Shown here piece by piece: positions 28,806 through 63,837 of a DNA stretch of 64,000 nt. A program made the position numbers and the translations under genes. The DNA is taken from positions 248,001 to 312,000 of IMG/VR virus record IMGVR_UViG_3300021964_000012; one strand, 5' to 3'. Below the pieces are notes generated by a model that was not told where the DNA came from, did not search any database, and saw nothing but the letters and a program-made list of their open reading frames with translations. Every line of letters starts with the position of its first letter. The first letter of the stretch is position 1.

Positions 28806-28872
28806 TATTTATAAGAATATCAATTTTCTTGCCTGATATACTGCCCTTTGCAAAGGTTTACATTGCTAAATA
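28806..28872. promoter_or_regulatory. Divergent late promoters with a central 12-bp palindrome
   Basis: ATAAATA on minus (28812..28806) for the sheath; CTAAATA on plus (28866..28872) 5 nt before ATG 28878; CCTTTGCAAAGG at 28845..28856. Confidence 0.55.
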
Positions 28873-57101: not shown

Positions 57102-58010
57102 TTAGTCTATAACACTTTTGGTGTTAACACCAGAAGCTTGTGATAATTCAGGCTTTGGAGCTGGTTTTACATCTGGCTTTGTAGTTCCATCCATGTCACC
57201 ATATTTTGGTGTTGAACGACCTGATGTGTTTCCATCTTTGATGTCGACTGGCTTTGCATCCATTCCTTTTTGACCTGAGTTAGCAGCTACTGGACTTTTA
57301 CTAGCTGGTGATGTTGTAACTGGCTTAGGAGCTGCAACTAATTCTACACCTTCTTCTAAACCTTCTACTTCAACATTAACATCGATTGGCTCGTCCATTT
57401 TGTCTTCCATGCCATCAATCTCGTCCTGCTCCATGTCAGTATCGCTATCAATGTCTGAAATCTCGTCTTGCTCGCCTTCAATGTCGTCTGTGTTATCGTC
57501 AACCTGTGCCATTAGCTCTTCGAATTCACCCATTAGTTCGTCTAATTTGTCTTCGATGTCTACTACACGGTCTTCTAATTCTTCTTCGCCGTCATCGTCA
57601 TCAACGTCTACGTCGATCATTTCGATTTCTTCTTCCTCATCTTCCATTCTGACGCCTTCTTCTTCGGCCTCAACTTCGTCAATGAGATCGTCAACCTGTG
57701 ATCCACCTAAATCTGTTTCATCAATCTTTTGATCGTTGTCATGTTCTGCGTCACGCTTGCCACGCTTTCCCATTTCGTCGTCTCTACGATCTTTCATTGA
57801 TTGTTTTTTGCCTGATTCAGCACCGTCTTTAGCACCTAAATGCTCATCTTCGCGGTCCTTGTAACCTTGCTTTTCTGTAATTTCTTCTTCTGACATAATG
57901 TCTTCGTATATGTCTTTTGACTTTTCCACAACAATCTCATGGAAAAGAGCTTTTGCATTTTTTTCATCATCGTTGATGACGAATTCAATAAGTTGCTCAA
58001 ATTTGTTCAT
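57102..58010 (-). CDS. Very acidic prohead core protein (gp67/gp68-like position)
   Basis: D/E-dominated; between portal and protease; GTAAGTA at 58052..58046. Confidence 0.65.
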   Translation of the reverse strand: MNKFEQLIEFVINDDEKNAKALFHEIVVEKSKDIYEDIMSEEEITEKQGYKDREDEHLGAKDGAESGKKQSMKDRRDDEMGKRGKRDAEHDNDQKIDETDLGGSQVDDLIDEVEAEEEGVRMEDEEEEIEMIDVDVDDDDGEEELEDRVVDIEDKLDELMGEFEELMAQVDDNTDDIEGEQDEISDIDSDTDMEQDEIDGMEDKMDEPIDVNVEVEGLEEGVELVAAPKPVTTSPASKSPVAANSGQKGMDAKPVDIKDGNTSGRSTPKYGDMDGTTKPDVKPAPKPELSQASGVNTKSVID

Positions 58011-58121: not shown

Positions 58122-58337
58122 CTACATCTGTGGTGGAGGTGGAGCAAATTGTGCTTGAATACGTTTGAGATCTTGCTTCTTCTCATAGTTTCTAAGATCG
58201 TACATTCTACGCAGTTTAGATATCTGCTTTAGTGTTAGTTTTGTTTTACGCAACTCGCCAAGTTCCGGAACAGAGTTATCGTCTTTCTGTTCTTGATATC
58301 CGTCTGCTGGTGCATCATAAAATTCAAATAGTTTCAT
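58122..58337 (-). CDS. Small head-associated protein
   Basis: 71 aa, starts MKLFEFY; ATAAATA (58349..58343) 5 nt before ATG. Confidence 0.65.
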   Translation of the reverse strand: MKLFEFYDAPADGYQEQKDDNSVPELGELRKTKLTLKQISKLRRMYDLRNYEKKQDLKRIQAQFAPPPPQM

Positions 58338-58345
58338 AATAGTAT

Positions 58346-60094
58346 TTATGCAGGAGGTTCTTCAGGAGCGGCTGGTGCAGCCATGTCAACATTTACATCA
58401 ACTTCTTCGCCACCTGCAGCTTCTTCACCAGCAACTGCATCTCCCATCTGTACATCACCTTCAAAGTCGCCAGGGCTTACACCTACTGTACGTAAATCAC
58501 TACCAGTTGGTTCAGTTTCAATTGGTTGTCCCGTTTCTTCTTCCCAATACTCAGTATTTTCTTGAAGTTCATCGTCGGTTAATCCAAGGTAGCGTTTCAG
58601 AAGAAAACGCTTGCTCATGTAGGGCAGTTGTTCCAATGCACTGAATGCTTGTATTCTAGTTGTGTCTAGTTCGGCCTGTCTATAGCTCGCAAAATTCTGT
58701 GGAGGTGCAAATGTAATGTTAAAAAGTCCACTGTCAATGTTGAACCCTCTCCAACGCATGAACATTTTGAATTCATCATCAAGTTTTTCAATTACCTGCT
58801 TTTGCAATCTTTCGCAGTATTGATTGAATCTGTATTCTTGTATGAGTGCAGTACCAACTCTACCGTCGTTCATTGGTCGATCTGAGTCATCTGGACCGGT
58901 TGGTAGATAACTGCTAGGAACACGCAAGCCTCTGCACATTTTGTTGTTAAAGTATTTTAAATCGTCAATCTGTCCAAGGTTTTCACCACCCGGCAGTGTT
59001 TCAACTTTTGATCCACGTCCTTCGGCAGTTTGAGGAAAGAAATAGTCTTCGTTTATGCTCAATGGATTGTAAGTTGTATCCATGGTTGTTGCTTGTTGAC
59101 CACCCTGTGGATTTGGGATACGTCTTTGATGTACTTCATTTTTCACACGTTCGACAAACTGCATGGCTAGATGTGATGGCATGTTTCCAACATCAATGTA
59201 AAATACACGTCTTTCAGGAGCACGTTGTACTCTGTATATAAGAATAGCATCTTCAAGCAATTCTTTTTGTTTGAACACTTTGAATATCATTTCCAGCACA
59301 CTCTGCGAGAAAGGCCAGAAAAAATCTAATCCTTCACTGAGTCCAAGATGCACTACATTTTTAGCATCAATTACGGTTTCATTTACTGTGTGTTCGAATC
59401 TGCTTTGTCCAGCAGGAGCATTTGGAATGGTATAGTTTGAACCACCCATGGCACTGCCACCAGTTCCAATTATTTCGCCTGAGTTTAATCCAGTGCCATA
59501 GTCGGTGGTTTTCTTTGGTGCAATACTGAGATTTTGAAAGTTTGGATTTATATCTCTAATCACATACTGCTCAGGACGTTTGCCTTCATTTTCATTAACA
59601 ATCACACGCACAACCTTGGTCATGTCAACCCAGTATAGTTCAAATGTTTCTGGATCACGCACAAACACTTGATCGCCGTACTTTATAGTGTTCCTAAAAA
59701 TACGAAACATACGCTGATCAAGTTTATTAAGTTTTGTCCACTGTTGTAGTTGTGTACGTATTATTTCAATTTCATTATTTGTTGGTTTATCAGTGTATTG
59801 CACTTCAAATGGAGTATTATTGCTTTCATTCTTTTGTGTTGCAAACTCTGCTATAATGTCCAAACAAGCATTGATTTCACTGTCAGTATCCATGTTTTCA
59901 TACTGATTGTAGCGTTCTATCCTGTTAGGATGACCAGAGTATACTTCTGGTAGATGACTTTGATAGTTTTTAAAACCAAACTGTCCGCCAGAACCACCAC
60001 TACCATAAGCAGGACCCCTTGCGTTTTGTCCACTTATAGGACTCAGTTGACCACCGGTGCTACCAACTGCTTTGAAGTATTTTTTCCAGGACAT
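58346..60094 (-). CDS. gp20: Portal protein, gp20-like
   Basis: LEDAILIYRVQRAPERRVFYIDVGNMP, EDYFFPQ..GRGSKVETLPGG, LRVPSSYL. Confidence 0.96.
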   Translation of the reverse strand: MSWKKYFKAVGSTGGQLSPISGQNARGPAYGSGGSGGQFGFKNYQSHLPEVYSGHPNRIERYNQYENMDTDSEINACLDIIAEFATQKNESNNTPFEVQYTDKPTNNEIEIIRTQLQQWTKLNKLDQRMFRIFRNTIKYGDQVFVRDPETFELYWVDMTKVVRVIVNENEGKRPEQYVIRDINPNFQNLSIAPKKTTDYGTGLNSGEIIGTGGSAMGGSNYTIPNAPAGQSRFEHTVNETVIDAKNVVHLGLSEGLDFFWPFSQSVLEMIFKVFKQKELLEDAILIYRVQRAPERRVFYIDVGNMPSHLAMQFVERVKNEVHQRRIPNPQGGQQATTMDTTYNPLSINEDYFFPQTAEGRGSKVETLPGGENLGQIDDLKYFNNKMCRGLRVPSSYLPTGPDDSDRPMNDGRVGTALIQEYRFNQYCERLQKQVIEKLDDEFKMFMRWRGFNIDSGLFNITFAPPQNFASYRQAELDTTRIQAFSALEQLPYMSKRFLLKRYLGLTDDELQENTEYWEEETGQPIETEPTGSDLRTVGVSPGDFEGDVQMGDAVAGEEAAGGEEVDVNVDMAAPAAPEEPPA

Positions 60095-60130: not shown

Positions 60131-62653
60131 TCAGTTGTTGCGAGCGGCCTGTAATTGTTCGCCTTGTAATCTTGTGCCTTTGGTTGTTTGATCCAGCATG
60201 GCCTGTAGTACACCAAGAATTTTCTCGTTACTGCCGCCATCACCTTGCATCGTTTGCGTTTCTCCTGCAGCTGGACCACCTTCCATGTCTGTGAGTCCTT
60301 GGTTGCTAATAGATAATCCACCTGCGTCGCCGAGTTTTGGGCCAGCAACTGATCTAAGTTGACTTAGTGCATCAAATTGACCACCTGTAGCAGCACCTTG
60401 AGCACCAACTGTTACACCATCTCCCATGCCATAACTCATTGAAGAAACTCCGCCTTTGCTAGTGTAACTGCTTACATTTCCTTTGTCTATTCTTTGGCCA
60501 GCCATTTGACCATTTACATAATCTCTTTCGTAGTTTACACCGCCAACAGTTCCTTGCATGCTCATCGAAGTTGATGCATCTGCTGAACTGCTCATTTGCA
60601 CGCCGCCTATTCTTGGTCCTTTTCTATAGAGTTCGTTTCCTCTACTGTCCACTGTTACAACAGAACCATCGCCGAGTTTGACATCAAAGGTTCCTGGTAT
60701 TCTTCCTGGCACACCTGGACCAACCTGTCCTGGTATTACCACTCCACTGGTTTTTCCCATTTTCAGTAATTCTGGTCCTTGTTCACCAACCAAATAGGTT
60801 TTACCTGCTTCGGCTGCTCCACCTTCTGCAAAACTACCAGCAACTTTAGCTTTACTTTTATCACCGCCTGAAGAAAAGTATCCAGTTAACGCACCAATTA
60901 AAGCACCAATTCCTCCGCCAATTGCTGTTCCTATTCCAGGAGCTATCGCTGTACCTATAGCAGCACCGGCTAATCCCAGTGTGCCAGCGCCTTTTAATGC
61001 ATTTCCTGTACGATCAATAGTTTCGTCTTTTATTCCTGCGTCTTCTTGCATCTTTTTCATCAGACCAGGTATACCATCTTTAATCAGTGTATCCATGTAG
61101 CCAACCAGCGATGACATGGTTTTTAATTGTATTTCAGCAAACTTTTTCACTGCCTCACTGGCCAATGGTAAAGTTTTATCTAAGGCAAATTGATCAAGTG
61201 CAGTAGCGGTTTTAATCATGGCTTCTTGAGCACTTACAACGTTCTTGGTTAACGAGTCTTGTGTGTTTGCAAGTTTGTTTGTTTCGTCTGTTGCTTTTTT
61301 AGAAGCTGCACCAAGATCTTTTGTAAAGGTCAAGGCTTGAAGTGCTGGAATAAGATTTTCAAGTGAAGTTCCCATTTTACTAACTTGAGATGCAAATGCA
61401 TCGCCACCTAGTCCTTGGTAGAATGTTTTACCTTGTTCTTGTAGCATGCTCAGTGCAGTTGACGAATCAATGGCACCAGATTTTAACTGCGATATTACCT
61501 GTTGACCAACTGGTCCCATGACTTTTAAGAATTCTTGAGCAGCTGGTGTTCCGGCATTGCTTAGTGCATCAGCTAAACCATCACCAATTGCTTTTAAACC
61601 AGGTATACTGTTCAGTGTGGTAATTGTTTTAAGTGTAGCTTGAGCGGCATCTTTACCATTTTTACGCTCAATTTCACGTATTGATGCACCTTGTCTAGCA
61701 TCACGTTGGACTGCATCAATTTCTTTCTGAGATTCTTCAATGCTTTTTCCAGTAATCTTGGATAGCTCTTGTAGATTCTTCATGTACTCTCGAGAACCTT
61801 GAGCCAGTGCTTGTGTGTTCTGAACTTCGTTACGACCTTGTCTTTGTTGGAACTGAATATATTTTGCGGTTAGTTCGTTTTGTTGTTCAACACCTATACC
61901 GAGTGTGAGCAATTCTGACCTAAATGGTCTCATGGCTTTGGTTGTATCGCTTAATCCTTTAGCAGCTTCAGCACTTGTGCCAAATGCAAACGATAATGTT
62001 TCACCTTCTTTGGTTACTGTTTTTGCAAAACTATCAAAACTCAATCCAGCATTCACAGCCTGTTGACCAAGTCCACGCATTCCGTCAGCACCAAGAGCAC
62101 CAGTCTGTGCCGCAGTTCTAAAAGCACCAGTGATTCTATCTAGTTCAGCAGTAAATGTTTTACCAACTGCACTTACTATTTCACCAGCAGCTTCGCTTAG
62201 AGCCGCTATCATAGTACCTGCAGCCTTTCCTAGTCCTCCAATTAAAGGTATAGCTCCAATAGTTGCTGATACCAATCCGCCTGTGACTTTACCAGCCATT
62301 TTGATTGCACTACCAGCCATTTCAATAGACGGATTTAGACTGCGAAACGACTCTCTGTTGTCTCGCATAGCAGTTGAAGCAGCTTCTAGTGCTTGTGCAA
62401 CGCTTAAGGTTCCACCAATTGCTTTTGTTGTGGTACGCATCGCCTTAGTTGTTAGACTTTGGCGTTGTCCTTCTTGTTTCATGCCTTTGGCAGTTAAGCC
62501 TTGCTCTTCTTTGTCAAGTTTGTTGCCTGACTTTAAAAGTTTAGTATAGTCTTCGAGGCTTTTTTTAGCATCCTCCATGTCAGGGCCAGAGCGACCGCCA
62601 GCTCGTTGTAGCTGTTCTAATATTTGTTGCAGTAGCCGCTCTTGTTCGTCCAT
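60131..62653 (-). CDS. Tape measure protein
   Basis: 840 aa helical Ala/Gly/Gln-rich; Gly-rich hydrophobic segments; FAEGG...YLVGEQGPEL motif; divergent from the gp26-like gene. Confidence 0.8.
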   Translation of the reverse strand: MDEQERLLQQILEQLQRAGGRSGPDMEDAKKSLEDYTKLLKSGNKLDKEEQGLTAKGMKQEGQRQSLTTKAMRTTTKAIGGTLSVAQALEAASTAMRDNRESFRSLNPSIEMAGSAIKMAGKVTGGLVSATIGAIPLIGGLGKAAGTMIAALSEAAGEIVSAVGKTFTAELDRITGAFRTAAQTGALGADGMRGLGQQAVNAGLSFDSFAKTVTKEGETLSFAFGTSAEAAKGLSDTTKAMRPFRSELLTLGIGVEQQNELTAKYIQFQQRQGRNEVQNTQALAQGSREYMKNLQELSKITGKSIEESQKEIDAVQRDARQGASIREIERKNGKDAAQATLKTITTLNSIPGLKAIGDGLADALSNAGTPAAQEFLKVMGPVGQQVISQLKSGAIDSSTALSMLQEQGKTFYQGLGGDAFASQVSKMGTSLENLIPALQALTFTKDLGAASKKATDETNKLANTQDSLTKNVVSAQEAMIKTATALDQFALDKTLPLASEAVKKFAEIQLKTMSSLVGYMDTLIKDGIPGLMKKMQEDAGIKDETIDRTGNALKGAGTLGLAGAAIGTAIAPGIGTAIGGGIGALIGALTGYFSSGGDKSKAKVAGSFAEGGAAEAGKTYLVGEQGPELLKMGKTSGVVIPGQVGPGVPGRIPGTFDVKLGDGSVVTVDSRGNELYRKGPRIGGVQMSSSADASTSMSMQGTVGGVNYERDYVNGQMAGQRIDKGNVSSYTSKGGVSSMSYGMGDGVTVGAQGAATGGQFDALSQLRSVAGPKLGDAGGLSISNQGLTDMEGGPAAGETQTMQGDGGSNEKILGVLQAMLDQTTKGTRLQGEQLQAARNN

Positions 62654-62706: not shown

Positions 62707-62719
62707 GGTAGGAAAAAAC

Positions 62720-63622
62720 ATGGCAATACAACCAGGCGCCCCAATTCAACCAGTACAACCAGTGATACCAAAAACTGCACACGCACCATCAGGCAATCCA
62801 TTGGCTAAACACTTTAGACAACCATCGATCTATATAAAATTGCCCAGTGAAGGTGTATGGTATGATGAATCTATTATTACTATCCCCGAATCAGGCGAAG
62901 TACCTGTTTATCCAATGACTGCACTTGACGAAATCACTTATAGAACTGCTGATGCATTGTTCAATGGACAAGCAGTTACAGATGTTATCAAAAGTTGCAT
63001 ACCTGCATTTAAAGATCCCGCACGAATCAGCACGTTGGATCTTGATACTGTGCTTATAGCAATTAGATTGGCAACTTTTGGTCATGAAATGGAATTTACC
63101 AGCAAGTGTCCAGAATGCGAAGAATCAAATGATCTTGCACTTGATCTTAGACAAATTATGGAAAAGGTTAAAAAACCTGACTTTGGATCACCGCTGTCAT
63201 TTGGTGATATTGAAATACATTTCAAACCGTTGACCTACAAAGAACAAAACGACAACAACATGGCACAGTTTGAAGATCAAAAAACCATGGAAAGCCTTCC
63301 AAATATGGAAATGTCTGAAGAAGAAAAACTCAAGATACTGCAAAAAGCATTTGGAAACATCAGCAAACTTACACTTGTTGCACTTGCAGACAGTATCAGC
63401 ATGATACAATCAGGCGATGATGTTGTTGTTGATCGAACACACATAGCAGAATATTTGGAAAATTGTCCATCACAACAGTTTGAAAAGATTAGAGAGAAGA
63501 TTGCTTCAATCAGAGAAAGTGGAGAAATGGATCCACTGCACATAGTGTGCAACGATTGCAAACACGAATATACCACACCATTTACAATGAATGTTGCAAA
63601 TTTTTTCGCATCAGGCTCTTAA
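62720..63622 (+). CDS. gp26: Baseplate hub assembly chaperone, T4 gp26-like (300 aa from ATG 62720)
   Basis: IYIKLPSEG, VYPMTALDE, DLDTVLIAIRLATFG..M..CPEC; TAGGA SD before MAIQPG. Confidence 0.8.
   Translation: MAIQPGAPIQPVQPVIPKTAHAPSGNPLAKHFRQPSIYIKLPSEGVWYDESIITIPESGEVPVYPMTALDEITYRTADALFNGQAVTDVIKSCIPAFKDPARISTLDLDTVLIAIRLATFGHEMEFTSKCPECEESNDLALDLRQIMEKVKKPDFGSPLSFGDIEIHFKPLTYKEQNDNNMAQFEDQKTMESLPNMEMSEEEKLKILQKAFGNISKLTLVALADSISMIQSGDDVVVDRTHIAEYLENCPSQQFEKIREKIASIRESGEMDPLHIVCNDCKHEYTTPFTMNVANFFASGS
63601..63607 (+). other. Candidate -1 ribosomal frameshift slippery site T TTT TTC
   Basis: X XXY YYZ heptamer in the gp26 frame (AAT TTT TTC); the -1 frame stays open to 63837. Confidence 0.7.
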
Positions 63623-63837
63623 CGTCCACGTCTGAAGAGATTGAAAAAATCATTGACGACATGGACAAAGAAGTTAAGAGCCTTAAAGAAAGCATGCTTA
63701 GAAGCGTTTGGTACATGCGAGGTGGTGTTACATACACCGAAATCGTAAACATGAGCTACGATGAACGAGTATCAATCAACAAAATCATCGAAGACAACTT
63801 AGAAACTGCAAAGAAAACTGGAAGAGATTTTTGGTAA
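63607..63837 (+). CDS. gp51-like / tail assembly chaperone T-type domain, probably made as the -1 frameshift extension of gp26
   Basis: RIRLLTSTSEEIEK...VWYMRGGVTYTEIVNMSYDER...; no SD before in-frame ATG 63661. Confidence 0.65.
   Translation, partial: RIRLLTSTSEEIEKIIDDMDKEVKSLKESMLRSVWYMRGGVTYTEIVNMSYDERVSINKIIEDNLETAKKTGRDFW

What the first reader, a model, noticed from the sequence alone, without database searches (positions are those of the whole stretch)
62720..63837. Candidate programmed -1 frameshift fusing T4-type gp26 to gp51: a lambda G/GT-like tail chaperone pair
Seen: the gp26-like ORF ends AAT TTT TTC GCA TCA GGC TCT TAA, so T-TTT-TTC (63601..63607) is a correctly phased X XXY YYZ heptamer four codons before the stop. 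The -1 frame is open to 63837 and encodes the whole gp51-like domain, and its in-frame ATG (63661) has no SD. Predicted products are 300 aa ending NFFASGS and 372 aa reading NFF-RIRLLTST. The pair sits head-to-head with the tape measure gene. Established: lambda G/GT, P2 E/E' and Mu use such a frameshift for tape-measure chaperones, while T4 gp26 and gp51 are treated as separate genes. Inference: in this clade gp26/gp51 is the G/GT system, tying T4 hub chaperones to the general tail assembly chaperone scheme. I cannot confirm from the sequence that this is unreported.
Basis: partly seen in the sequence, partly recalled or inferred. Interest (0 to 1): 0.85.

Follow-up and report, generated by a model that had tools for sequence, protein, structure and literature searches.

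The report
Conserved -1 recoding in gp26-type chaperone
This phage's tail chaperone gene carries a real, deeply conserved slip site that should yield a short (T4 gp26-like) and a long (T4 gp51-like) protein, but this arrangement was already described for T4-like phages in 2022, so this is a well-supported new example rather than a discovery.

Summary
ORF 62720..63622 (300 aa, Pfam PF12322, T4 gp26/gp51 family) carries a phased T TTT TTC at 63601-63607, four codons before its stop. The -1 frame then runs 76 codons to 63837.

The same phased heptamer and a conserved 58-77 aa -1 extension occur in every complete homologous locus I checked:
- 51 uncultured relatives of the window;
- 9 cultured jumbo phages (RaK2, Atu_ph07, Phosso and others);
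- 79 of 79 cyanophage-type loci plus Syn9;
- Aeromonas phage Aeh1.

The conserved peptide starts at the heptamer, often 18-36 codons before any possible start codon, so a separate small gene is not credible.

T4 gp26 and gp51 are paralogues, both full-length PF12322. The -1 extension matches only the C-terminal tail of gp51 (hhalign E 1e-5; 2e-7 for cyanophages). So the short product corresponds to gp26 and the long product to all of gp51.

This is not new. Citing papers attribute it to Vladimirov, Gautam and Davidson (Virology 2022), which I could not read. Ribosomal frameshifting versus transcriptional slippage is untested, and homology to lambda G/GT was not detectable. Interest is low to moderate; the practical value is correcting annotation.

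The parts
62720..63622 (+). Short-form gene: gp26-type baseplate-hub / tail assembly chaperone (TAC-N), 300 aa plus TAA stop
   Evidence: PF12322 T4_baseplate, E 1.1e-16, 61.7 bits against a 24.5 cutoff, residues 83-296. phrog_150 'baseplate hub', E 1.5e-22. AF2 model pLDDT 83.7; its best BFVD matches are gp26/gp51-like proteins.
62710..62713 (+). Shine-Dalgarno-like AGGA, 6 nt before ATG 62720
   Evidence: Read from the sequence.
63601..63607 (+). Phased slippery heptamer T TTT TTC (X XXY YYZ); the PF12322 domain ends on these codons (N294 F295 F296)
   Evidence: Identical and in phase in all 34 non-redundant relatives, with one T TTT TTT variant, in 79/79 cyanophage-type loci, and in Syn9 and Aeh1.
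63620..63622 (+). 0-frame stop codon TAA ending the short form (NFFASGS*)
   Evidence: In homologues the stop lies 2-13 codons after the heptamer.
63607..63837 (+). -1 frame extension: 76 codons (RIRLLTS...WYMRGG...NMSYDER...KKTGRDFW) plus TAA; equivalent to the C-terminal tail of T4 gp51
   Evidence: Alignment A1 of 28 extensions: R1, L4, L5, W35, R38, G39, Y43, E53 and R54 are at least 90% conserved. hhalign against T4-type gp51: probability 81.8%, E 1.1e-5, extension 38-74 to gp51 221-257.
63624..63666 (+). Possible downstream stem-loop (GUCCA...UGGAC), 16 nt after the heptamer; weak evidence and not positionally conserved outside the window's close relatives
   Evidence: MFE -12.2 kcal/mol against -4.8 +/- 2.4 for synonymous recodings, z -3.1. 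Across 34 loci mean z is -1.4; across 26 cyanophage loci mean z is -1.2.
60131..62653 (-). Divergent neighbour: 840-aa probable tape-measure protein (T4 gp29 analogue), the likely client of the chaperone
   Evidence: phrog_14121 E 1.4e-8; phrog_1538 'tail length tape measure protein' E 1.3e-3. The RaK2 orthologue in the same position is annotated as similar to a tape-measure protein.
58346..60094 (-). gp20-type portal gene; shows the T4-superfamily context and conserved synteny (portal, tape measure, then the divergent chaperone gene)
   Evidence: PF07230 Portal_T4, E 9.9e-105. The same order is seen in RaK2 and Phosso.

Best explanation
Gene 62720..63622 encodes the tail/baseplate-hub assembly chaperone of a T4-superfamily jumbo phage. 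It is decoded in two ways.

Most ribosomes read through T TTT TTC and stop at 63620, giving a 300-aa short form equivalent to T4 gp26 (TAC-N). A minority shift to the -1 frame on the heptamer: the P-site and A-site tRNA-Phe re-pair from UUU UUC to UUU UUU. They then read 76 more codons to 63837, giving a 372-aa long form equivalent to T4 gp51 (TAC-NC).

By analogy with lambda G/GT, the shared N-terminal domain would hold the tape-measure/hub complex, and the extra tail of the rarer long form would link it to other tail parts. Neither form is expected in the finished virion.

Shown here: the anatomy, the conservation, and the homology of both parts to gp26/gp51. Inferred: that the shift is ribosomal, its efficiency, and the binding partners.
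For: 1. Site conservation:
- The phased T TTT TTC is present in 51/51 intact uncultured loci at 28-100% aa identity, plus Atu_ph07, Phosso and RaK2. It is also in XaC1, Turkey3, CBB, BF, GAP32 and 7t3, cyanophage Syn9, 79/79 complete cyanophage-type loci and Aeh1.
- The flanking codons vary. The preceding codon is AAT, GAT, CAT, AGT, TCT or CGT, always NNT (34/34, against 63% T at comparable sites).
- The first Phe codon is TTT in 34/34 (background 69%). The second is TTC in 33/34 (background 31%).

2. The -1 frame:
- It is always open for 58-77 codons and is conserved as protein from the first codon after the heptamer (R-x-R-L-L).
- It is closed 3-39 codons upstream of the heptamer in all 55 loci tested.
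- The first possible start codon is often 18-36 codons downstream, sometimes beyond the WYMRGG motif.

3. Relation to T4:
- PF12322 ends exactly at the heptamer (residue 296).
- T4 gp26 (residues 1-206) and gp51 (residues 1-201) are both full-length PF12322, and gp51 has 48 extra residues.
- The extension matches that tail: hhalign E 1.1e-5 for the window's clade and E 2.4e-7 for cyanophages.

4. Downstream RNA is more structured than synonymous recodings: mean z -1.4 and -1.2, with clear hairpins starting 6-7 nt after the heptamer in several lineages.

5. Literature:
- T4 gp26 and gp51 are listed as hub assembly chaperones (PMC3004832).
- Poly-T -1 frameshift signals in 'TAC-N genes of T4-like phages', and separate short and long genes in some T4-like phages, are attributed to Vladimirov et al. 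2022.
Against: - There are no protein or RNA data for this phage, and I did not see any experimental demonstration in a relative.
- A one-U insertion by RNA polymerase on the T6 run would produce the same long protein. The phase of the run is partly forced by the conserved Phe-Phe dipeptide, and the C and G after the run are explained by the conserved Arg (CGN) of the long form. So the nucleotide conservation is not fully independent evidence for a ribosomal mechanism.
- The downstream RNA structure is not positionally conserved. It is absent in Syn9 and the RaK2 group.
- tRNA-Phe slipping from UUC to UUU moves from the stronger to the weaker pairing. From memory, the same occurs at the T7 gene 10 site G GUU UUC.
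[quoted passage not shown] I could not read it to see what it means for sites like this one.
Confidence: 0.72

Rival explanations
1. The two products are real, but the shift happens at transcription. RNA polymerase stutters on the T6 run and adds one U, so a fraction of mRNAs encode the long form in a single frame.
For: The site is a homopolymer run, and an extra U gives exactly the same NFF-RIR junction. The only variant seen lengthens the run to T7 (L062). Downstream structure is inconsistent among lineages. [quoted passage not shown]
Against: The run is exactly six T in 33 of 34 non-redundant relatives of the window and in all 79 cyanophage-type loci; the base before it is never T. From general knowledge, efficient bacterial transcriptional slippage usually needs about 8-9 or more identical bases, and selection for slippage would favour longer runs. 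The run is always in the X XXY YYZ phase. Several lineages have a hairpin at the 5-8 nt spacing typical of frameshift stimulators.
Confidence: 0.18
2. There is no recoding. The downstream frame is a separate small gene (a 'short gp51', as annotated in cyanophages, Phosso, CBB and others), translated from its own start such as ATG 63661.
For: GenBank records annotate it this way. Some lineages have an ATG one codon after the heptamer (Atu_ph07, Phosso, L043, L045, L049-51).
Against: There is no conserved start. The first ATG/GTG/TTG in the -1 frame lies 18-36 codons after the heptamer in many loci, inside or beyond conserved residues. The peptide is conserved from the first codon after the heptamer. 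No SD precedes ATG 63661. In T4 the homologous tail is covalently joined to a PF12322 domain. Synonymous positions of the heptamer are invariant.
Confidence: 0.04
3. Chance or artefact: an assembly indel in a homopolymer, or a fortuitous open frame.
For: Homopolymer runs are prone to sequencing errors. A single window cannot exclude this.
Against: The same two-frame layout occurs in more than 140 independently assembled loci and in finished isolate genomes from many laboratories. A 76-codon open -1 frame is unlikely at about 5% stops per codon.
Confidence: 0.01

Closest known systems
Tail assembly chaperone locus of T4-like phages (T4 gp26 and gp51; Vladimirov, Gautam, Davidson, Virology 2022;566:9-15)
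   Same: Same protein family (PF12322) for the shared domain. The same C-terminal tail defines the long form. There is a poly-T slip signal at the 3' end of the short gene, as citing papers describe for T4-like phages. The role is hub/tail assembly chaperone.
   Different: T4 itself has no slip site: gp26 ends KEFFELL*. It encodes the two forms as separate, divergently transcribed paralogous genes. The window's protein has about 80 extra N-terminal residues. It belongs to an uncultured marine jumbo-phage clade only 28-34% identical to its nearest cultured relatives. I could not check whether that clade was covered in the paper.
Lambda gpG/gpGT (also P2 E/E+E' and Mu) tail assembly chaperones with a conserved -1 frameshift (Xu, Hendrix, Duda, Mol Cell 2004)
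   Same: A short abundant form and a rare C-terminally extended form come from one locus by a -1 shift a few codons before the stop. The gene lies next to the tape-measure gene. The products are expected to be absent from virions.
   Different: No detectable sequence or fold similarity. The heptamer is T TTT TTC, not G GGA AAG. The gene is divergent from the tape-measure gene rather than directly upstream and co-directional. The protein is larger (300 aa) and has four conserved Cys.
T7 gene 10A/10B -1 frameshift (G GUU UUC)
   Same: A U-rich site with tRNA-Phe on UUC in the A site slipping to UUU, giving a minor C-terminally extended product. The comparison is made in PMC12846349.
   Different: T7 10A/10B is a capsid protein, not a chaperone, and its P-site codon differs. 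The T7 sequence is recalled from memory and was not tested here.
Vandenendeviridae/Andersonviridae TAC locus with an invariant GTTTTT motif (PMC12846349)
   Same: The same kind of argument and the same annotation problem: the downstream -1 frame is routinely annotated as a hypothetical protein, and there is a conserved T-rich motif at the 3' end of TAC-N.
   Different: Different phage families. I did not test whether their TAC-N is PF12322.

Membership tests
T4 gp26/gp51 baseplate-hub assembly chaperone family (Pfam PF12322 T4_baseplate) | PF12322 domain above the curated cutoff | tested here: met
   61.7 bits against a 24.5 cutoff, E 1.1e-16. All 22 members of A3 match. T4 gp26 and gp51 match at E 8.8e-64 and 3.9e-52.
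T4 gp26/gp51 baseplate-hub assembly chaperone family (Pfam PF12322 T4_baseplate) | Predicted fold shared with gp26/gp51-type proteins | tested here: met
   AF2 model pLDDT 83.7. 59 BFVD matches at E <= 0.001, the named ones mostly 'baseplate hub' or 'baseplate hub assembly' proteins; best TM 0.83-0.87.
T4 gp26/gp51 baseplate-hub assembly chaperone family (Pfam PF12322 T4_baseplate) | Long form carries the gp51-type C-terminal tail | tested here: met
   hhalign of the extension against gp51: probability 81.8%, E 1.1e-5, colinear with the gp51 C-terminus. Cyanophage extensions: 93.4%, E 2.4e-7. The direct comparison A1 against A4 is weak (E 0.004) but in the same register.
T4-like TAC locus with a poly-T -1 recoding signal (as attributed to Vladimirov et al. 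2022) | [quoted passage not shown] | tested here: met
   T TTT TTC at 63601-63607; conserved in all relatives.
T4-like TAC locus with a poly-T -1 recoding signal (as attributed to Vladimirov et al. 2022) | Uninterrupted, conserved -1 frame reachable only from the upstream gene | tested here: met
   The extension is 58-77 codons in all loci. The -1 frame is closed upstream. Start codons are absent or lie far downstream in many loci.
T4-like TAC locus with a poly-T -1 recoding signal (as attributed to Vladimirov et al. 2022) | Two protein isoforms actually made | not testable with these tools
   Needs proteomics or reporters.
Lambda G/GT-type tail assembly chaperones (Xu, Hendrix, Duda 2004) | -1 frameshift near the end of the first of two overlapping ORFs, giving short and long forms | tested here: met
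   Anatomy as above.
Lambda G/GT-type tail assembly chaperones (Xu, Hendrix, Duda 2004) | Position between the tail tube gene and the tape-measure gene, co-directional and immediately upstream of the tape-measure gene | tested here: not met
   The gene is adjacent to the probable tape-measure gene but divergently transcribed. RaK2 and Phosso are the same.
Lambda G/GT-type tail assembly chaperones (Xu, Hendrix, Duda 2004) | Sequence or fold homology to known TAC families | tested here: not met
   No Pfam TAC family at E <= 1 in any of 22 members. No PDB sequence match. No PDB fold match at E <= 0.001. More sensitive methods may differ; the 2022 paper reportedly makes this link by bioinformatics.
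Lambda G/GT-type tail assembly chaperones (Xu, Hendrix, Duda 2004) | Shared domain binds the tape measure, the extension binds the tube protein, and both are absent from virions | not testable with these tools
   The only support is the T4 literature: gp51 is required for assembly but absent from the particle (PMC3004832).
Programmed transcriptional slippage sites | Long homopolymer run (typically about 8-9 or more in bacteria; from general knowledge) | tested here: not met
   The run is exactly T6 in 33 of 34 relatives of the window and in all 79 cyanophage-type loci, and T7 once.

The most novel reading that the evidence does not exclude
The invariant T6 run might work wholly or partly by programmed transcriptional slippage of the phage-modified host RNA polymerase, not by ribosomal frameshifting. 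Under either mechanism, this single-gene recoding arrangement may be the ancestral state of the whole T4 superfamily. It is seen in jumbo RaK2/Atu_ph07-type phages, cyanophages and Aeh1. T4's separate genes 26 and 51 would then be a later hard-wiring of the two isoforms by duplication. I could not establish how much of this is already in the 2022 paper.
Probability: 0.15. Interest if true: 0.5.

Novelty: new member of a known kind. Interest (0 to 1): 0.3.

Why it matters
The biological point is already in the literature: T4-type hub chaperones follow the general two-isoform tail-chaperone scheme.

What this analysis adds is breadth:
- One heptamer, T TTT TTC, is kept in phase across jumbo phages, cyanophages and a Straboviridae member, at protein identities down to about 25%.
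- None of the 10 cultured-phage GenBank records I inspected that carry the site annotates the long form.
- Aeh1's 'missing' gp51 is explained by this recoding.

The locus is therefore a good natural test set for frameshift predictors, and a simple annotation fix for many phage genomes.

Tried and rejected
- blastn of the region against cultured phages found nothing.
- tblastn with the 76-aa extension found only Atu_ph07 and Phosso.
- Pfam and PHROGs give nothing useful for the extension. The Pfam label PF28602, seen precomputed on gp51 proteins, is not in the Pfam copy I could scan.
- Direct BLASTP of the window proteins against T4 gp51 was uninformative; profiles were needed.
- hhalign of the full short-form alignment against gp51 aligned only the N-terminal half (probability 60%).
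- PDB sequence and fold searches gave no relative, so the lambda-type TAC fold could not be tested.
- Whole-region dinucleotide-shuffle z-scores for downstream RNA were mixed. A synonymous-codon null gave a modest, non-universal signal, so I do not claim a conserved stimulatory structure.
- The T4 late-promoter consensus TATAAATA is not enriched: 1 match against 4.7 expected, and none near this gene.
- The key prior paper is not in the library. Citing papers gave only one-sentence summaries.

Full report
**Observation.**
- An ORF starts at ATG 62720, with AGGA six bases upstream.
- It ends ...GCA AAT TTT TTC GCA TCA GGC TCT TAA, with the stop at 63620-63622.
- With codons AAT at 63599, TTT at 63602 and TTC at 63605, T TTT TTC (63601-63607) is a phased X XXY YYZ heptamer four codons before the stop.
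- The -1 frame is open to the TAA at 63835-63837.
- The products would be 300 aa and 296 + 76 = 372 aa.
- ATG 63661 has no Shine-Dalgarno-like sequence.
- The gene is divergent from an 840-aa ORF (60131..62653, minus strand) that has weak tape-measure matches. A gp20-type portal gene lies next to that ORF.

**What the gene is.** The 300-aa product matches Pfam PF12322 (T4_baseplate; E 1.1e-16, residues 83-296) and phrog_150 'baseplate hub'.
- The nearest cultured relatives, at 28-34% identity, are jumbo phages: Phosso, Atu_ph07, XaC1, CBB, GAP32, BF, the RaK2 and 121Q groups, and PA5oct.
- An IMG/VR contig of 328 kb carries an identical gene (L005).
- The AlphaFold2 model is confident (pLDDT 83.7). 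It matches predicted structures of gp26/gp51-like hub proteins from many myoviruses but no solved structure.

**Conservation of the site.**
- In all 51 uncultured loci with an intact 3' end (28-100% identity) and in Atu_ph07, Phosso and RaK2, the gene ends with a phased T TTT TTC, with one T TTT TTT variant. The 0-frame stop lies 2-7 codons later.
- Six further cultured jumbo phages show the same, with the stop up to 13 codons later.
- Flanking codons vary while the heptamer does not. The preceding codon is AAT, GAT, CAT, AGT, TCT or CGT, always NNT (34/34, against 63% T at comparable two-fold sites).
- The first Phe is TTT in 34/34 (69% elsewhere). The second is TTC in 33/34 (31% elsewhere). 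The C and the following G are also explained by the conserved Arg (CGN) that opens the -1 peptide.

**The -1 frame is coding from the heptamer onward.**
- The extension is 70-77 aa in the window's clade and its cultured jumbo relatives.
- It is conserved from its first residue: R-x-R-L-L, then (D/E)EI, WYMRGG, NMS..ER and ETTKKT..PFF.
- The -1 frame is closed 3-39 codons upstream of the heptamer in all 55 loci tested.
- The first possible start codon is often 18, 29, 32 or 36 codons downstream, in some cases beyond WYMRGG.
- A separately initiated small protein therefore cannot account for the conserved N-terminal part.
- None of the 10 cultured-phage records I inspected that carry the site annotates a joined CDS. 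They call a short 'hypothetical protein', a short 'gp51-like' ORF (Syn9), or nothing.

**Relation to T4.**
- In T4, genes 26 and 51 are divergent neighbours.
- Both proteins match PF12322 end to end: gp26 residues 1-206 of 208 and gp51 residues 1-201 of 249. They are therefore paralogues, and gp51 has 48 extra C-terminal residues.
- In the window protein, PF12322 ends at residue 296, exactly on the heptamer.
- A profile of 28 extensions aligns with the C-terminal end of a profile of 20 T4-type gp51 proteins: probability 81.8%, E 1.1e-5, extension 38-74 to gp51 221-257.
- So the short product corresponds to gp26 and the frameshift product to the whole of gp51. This differs from 'gp26 fused to gp51'.
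- T4 gp26 ends KEFFELL* and has no slippery run.

**Breadth across the T4 superfamily.**
- Sullivan et al. 2010 (PMC3037559) noted that cyanophage and marine vibriophage 'gp51' is only about 20% of the T4 length. It lacks the first ~200 residues, and gp51 is 'missing only in Aeh1'.
- In cyanophage Syn9, the gp26-like gene ends TCT TTT TTC GGG TAG, with the phased heptamer at 7188-7194 of L069. The annotated 47-aa 'gp51-like' ORF lies inside the 65-codon -1 extension.
- Of 80 related IMG/VR loci, 79 complete ones have the phased heptamer exactly two codons before the stop and a 60-70 aa extension. The 80th is cut by the contig end.
- The cyanophage extensions match the gp51 tail at probability 93.4%, E 2.4e-7.
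- In Aeh1 (Straboviridae), gp26 ends GAT TTT TTC GAC TGA. A 58-codon gp51-tail-like extension fills an unannotated 167-nt gap.
- The single-gene recoding arrangement is thus widespread. The two-gene arrangement was seen here in T4 and in the close homologues of its gp51.

**Mechanism.**
- The heptamer allows both tRNA-Phe to re-pair in the -1 frame, and its phase is invariant.
- Against a synonymous-codon null, the 54 nt beginning 5 nt after the heptamer are more structured than expected. Mean z is -1.4 over 34 loci (14 below -1.64) and -1.2 over 26 cyanophage loci.
- Several lineages have a clear hairpin starting 6-7 nt after the heptamer (GCUUCU...AGAAGC in L045-L056). The window's own clade has a GUCCA...UGGAC stem 16 nt downstream (z -3.1).
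- The structure is not positionally conserved and is absent in Syn9 and the RaK2 group, so it is only suggestive.
- Transcriptional slippage adding one U would give the same protein and cannot be excluded. The run length of exactly six, never extended upstream, argues against it.

**Prior knowledge.**
- The T4 tail review lists gp26 and gp51 as hub assembly chaperones, and gp51 as required for assembly but absent from the particle (PMC3004832).
- Some GenBank records already name gp51 'tape measure protein assembly chaperone'.
[quoted passage not shown] The paper is not held.
- PMC12846349 cites it for poly-T -1 frameshift signals in 'TAC-N genes of T4-like phages'.
- The PRFect paper cites it for T4-like phages that carry one short gene and one longer fusion gene instead of frameshifting.

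**Comparison with lambda G/GT.**
- The genetic logic is the same.
- I found no sequence or fold similarity to lambda-type chaperones.
- The gene is divergent from the tape-measure gene rather than upstream of it.
- I file the locus under the T4-type chaperone family. It works like G/GT, but membership of the lambda family is not shown.

**Verdict.** The locus is a new member of a known kind, in an uncultured marine jumbo phage. Interest is 0.3. The value lies in the strength and breadth of the comparative evidence and in correcting annotation.

Noticed in passing
L150:2199-2377 (Aeromonas phage Aeh1, NC_005260): Sullivan et al. 2010 reported gp51 as missing only in Aeh1. It is present as a 58-codon -1 extension of gp26, after a phased T TTT TTC, in a 167-nt stretch with no annotated gene.
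   Followed up: yes
window 63107-63118 and 63548-63559 (C130, C133, C277, C280 of the 300-aa protein): Two CxxC pairs about 145 residues apart are at least 90% conserved in the family, and weak zinc-ribbon Pfam hits recur. T4-type gp51 has invariant C85, C88, C185 and C186. The chaperone domain probably binds zinc, which I have not seen discussed.
   Followed up: partly
window 63598-63604: A second phased heptamer, A AAT TTT, overlaps the main one wherever the preceding codons are GCA AAT, as in the window and many close relatives. It is not conserved in other clades, and tRNA-Asn re-pairing would be poor, so it is probably incidental.
   Followed up: partly
L003:4350-4713 (RaK2), L001:4332-4432 (Atu_ph07); records listed: Annotation problems in cultured jumbo phages. 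RaK2 has a 365-nt unannotated gap holding the extension, and Atu_ph07 calls only a 40-aa ORF. The gp26 homologue is labelled 'portal protein' in WPEC5 and 'Lead, cadmium, zinc and mercury transporting ATPase' in the Yersinia fHe-Yen9 phages.
   Followed up: partly
window 57102-58010 (-): A 302-aa extremely acidic Asp/Glu-rich ORF lies downstream of the portal gene, with a 71-aa ORF (58122-58337) between them. It could be a scaffold or internal head protein. Not analysed.
   Followed up: no
whole window: The T4 late-promoter consensus TATAAATA occurs once (28806-28813, minus strand) against 4.7 expected by chance, and not near the chaperone or tape-measure genes. Late transcription signals in this phage probably differ from T4.
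   Followed up: partly
window 61000-61150 (-), within the 840-aa ORF: The probable tape-measure protein has a long Gly/Ala/Ile-rich hydrophobic stretch (…GAGTLGLAGAAIGTAIAPGIGTAIGGGIGALIGALTGYF…) typical of tape-measure membrane-active segments. Coordinates are approximate.
   Followed up: no
L004:3803-3830 (-) (T4 gene 26 3' end): T4 gp26 ends FF-E-LL*. It thus keeps the first residues (x-LL) that belong only to the long form in frameshifting phages. This would fit descent from a frameshifting ancestor, but I did not test it.
   Followed up: no
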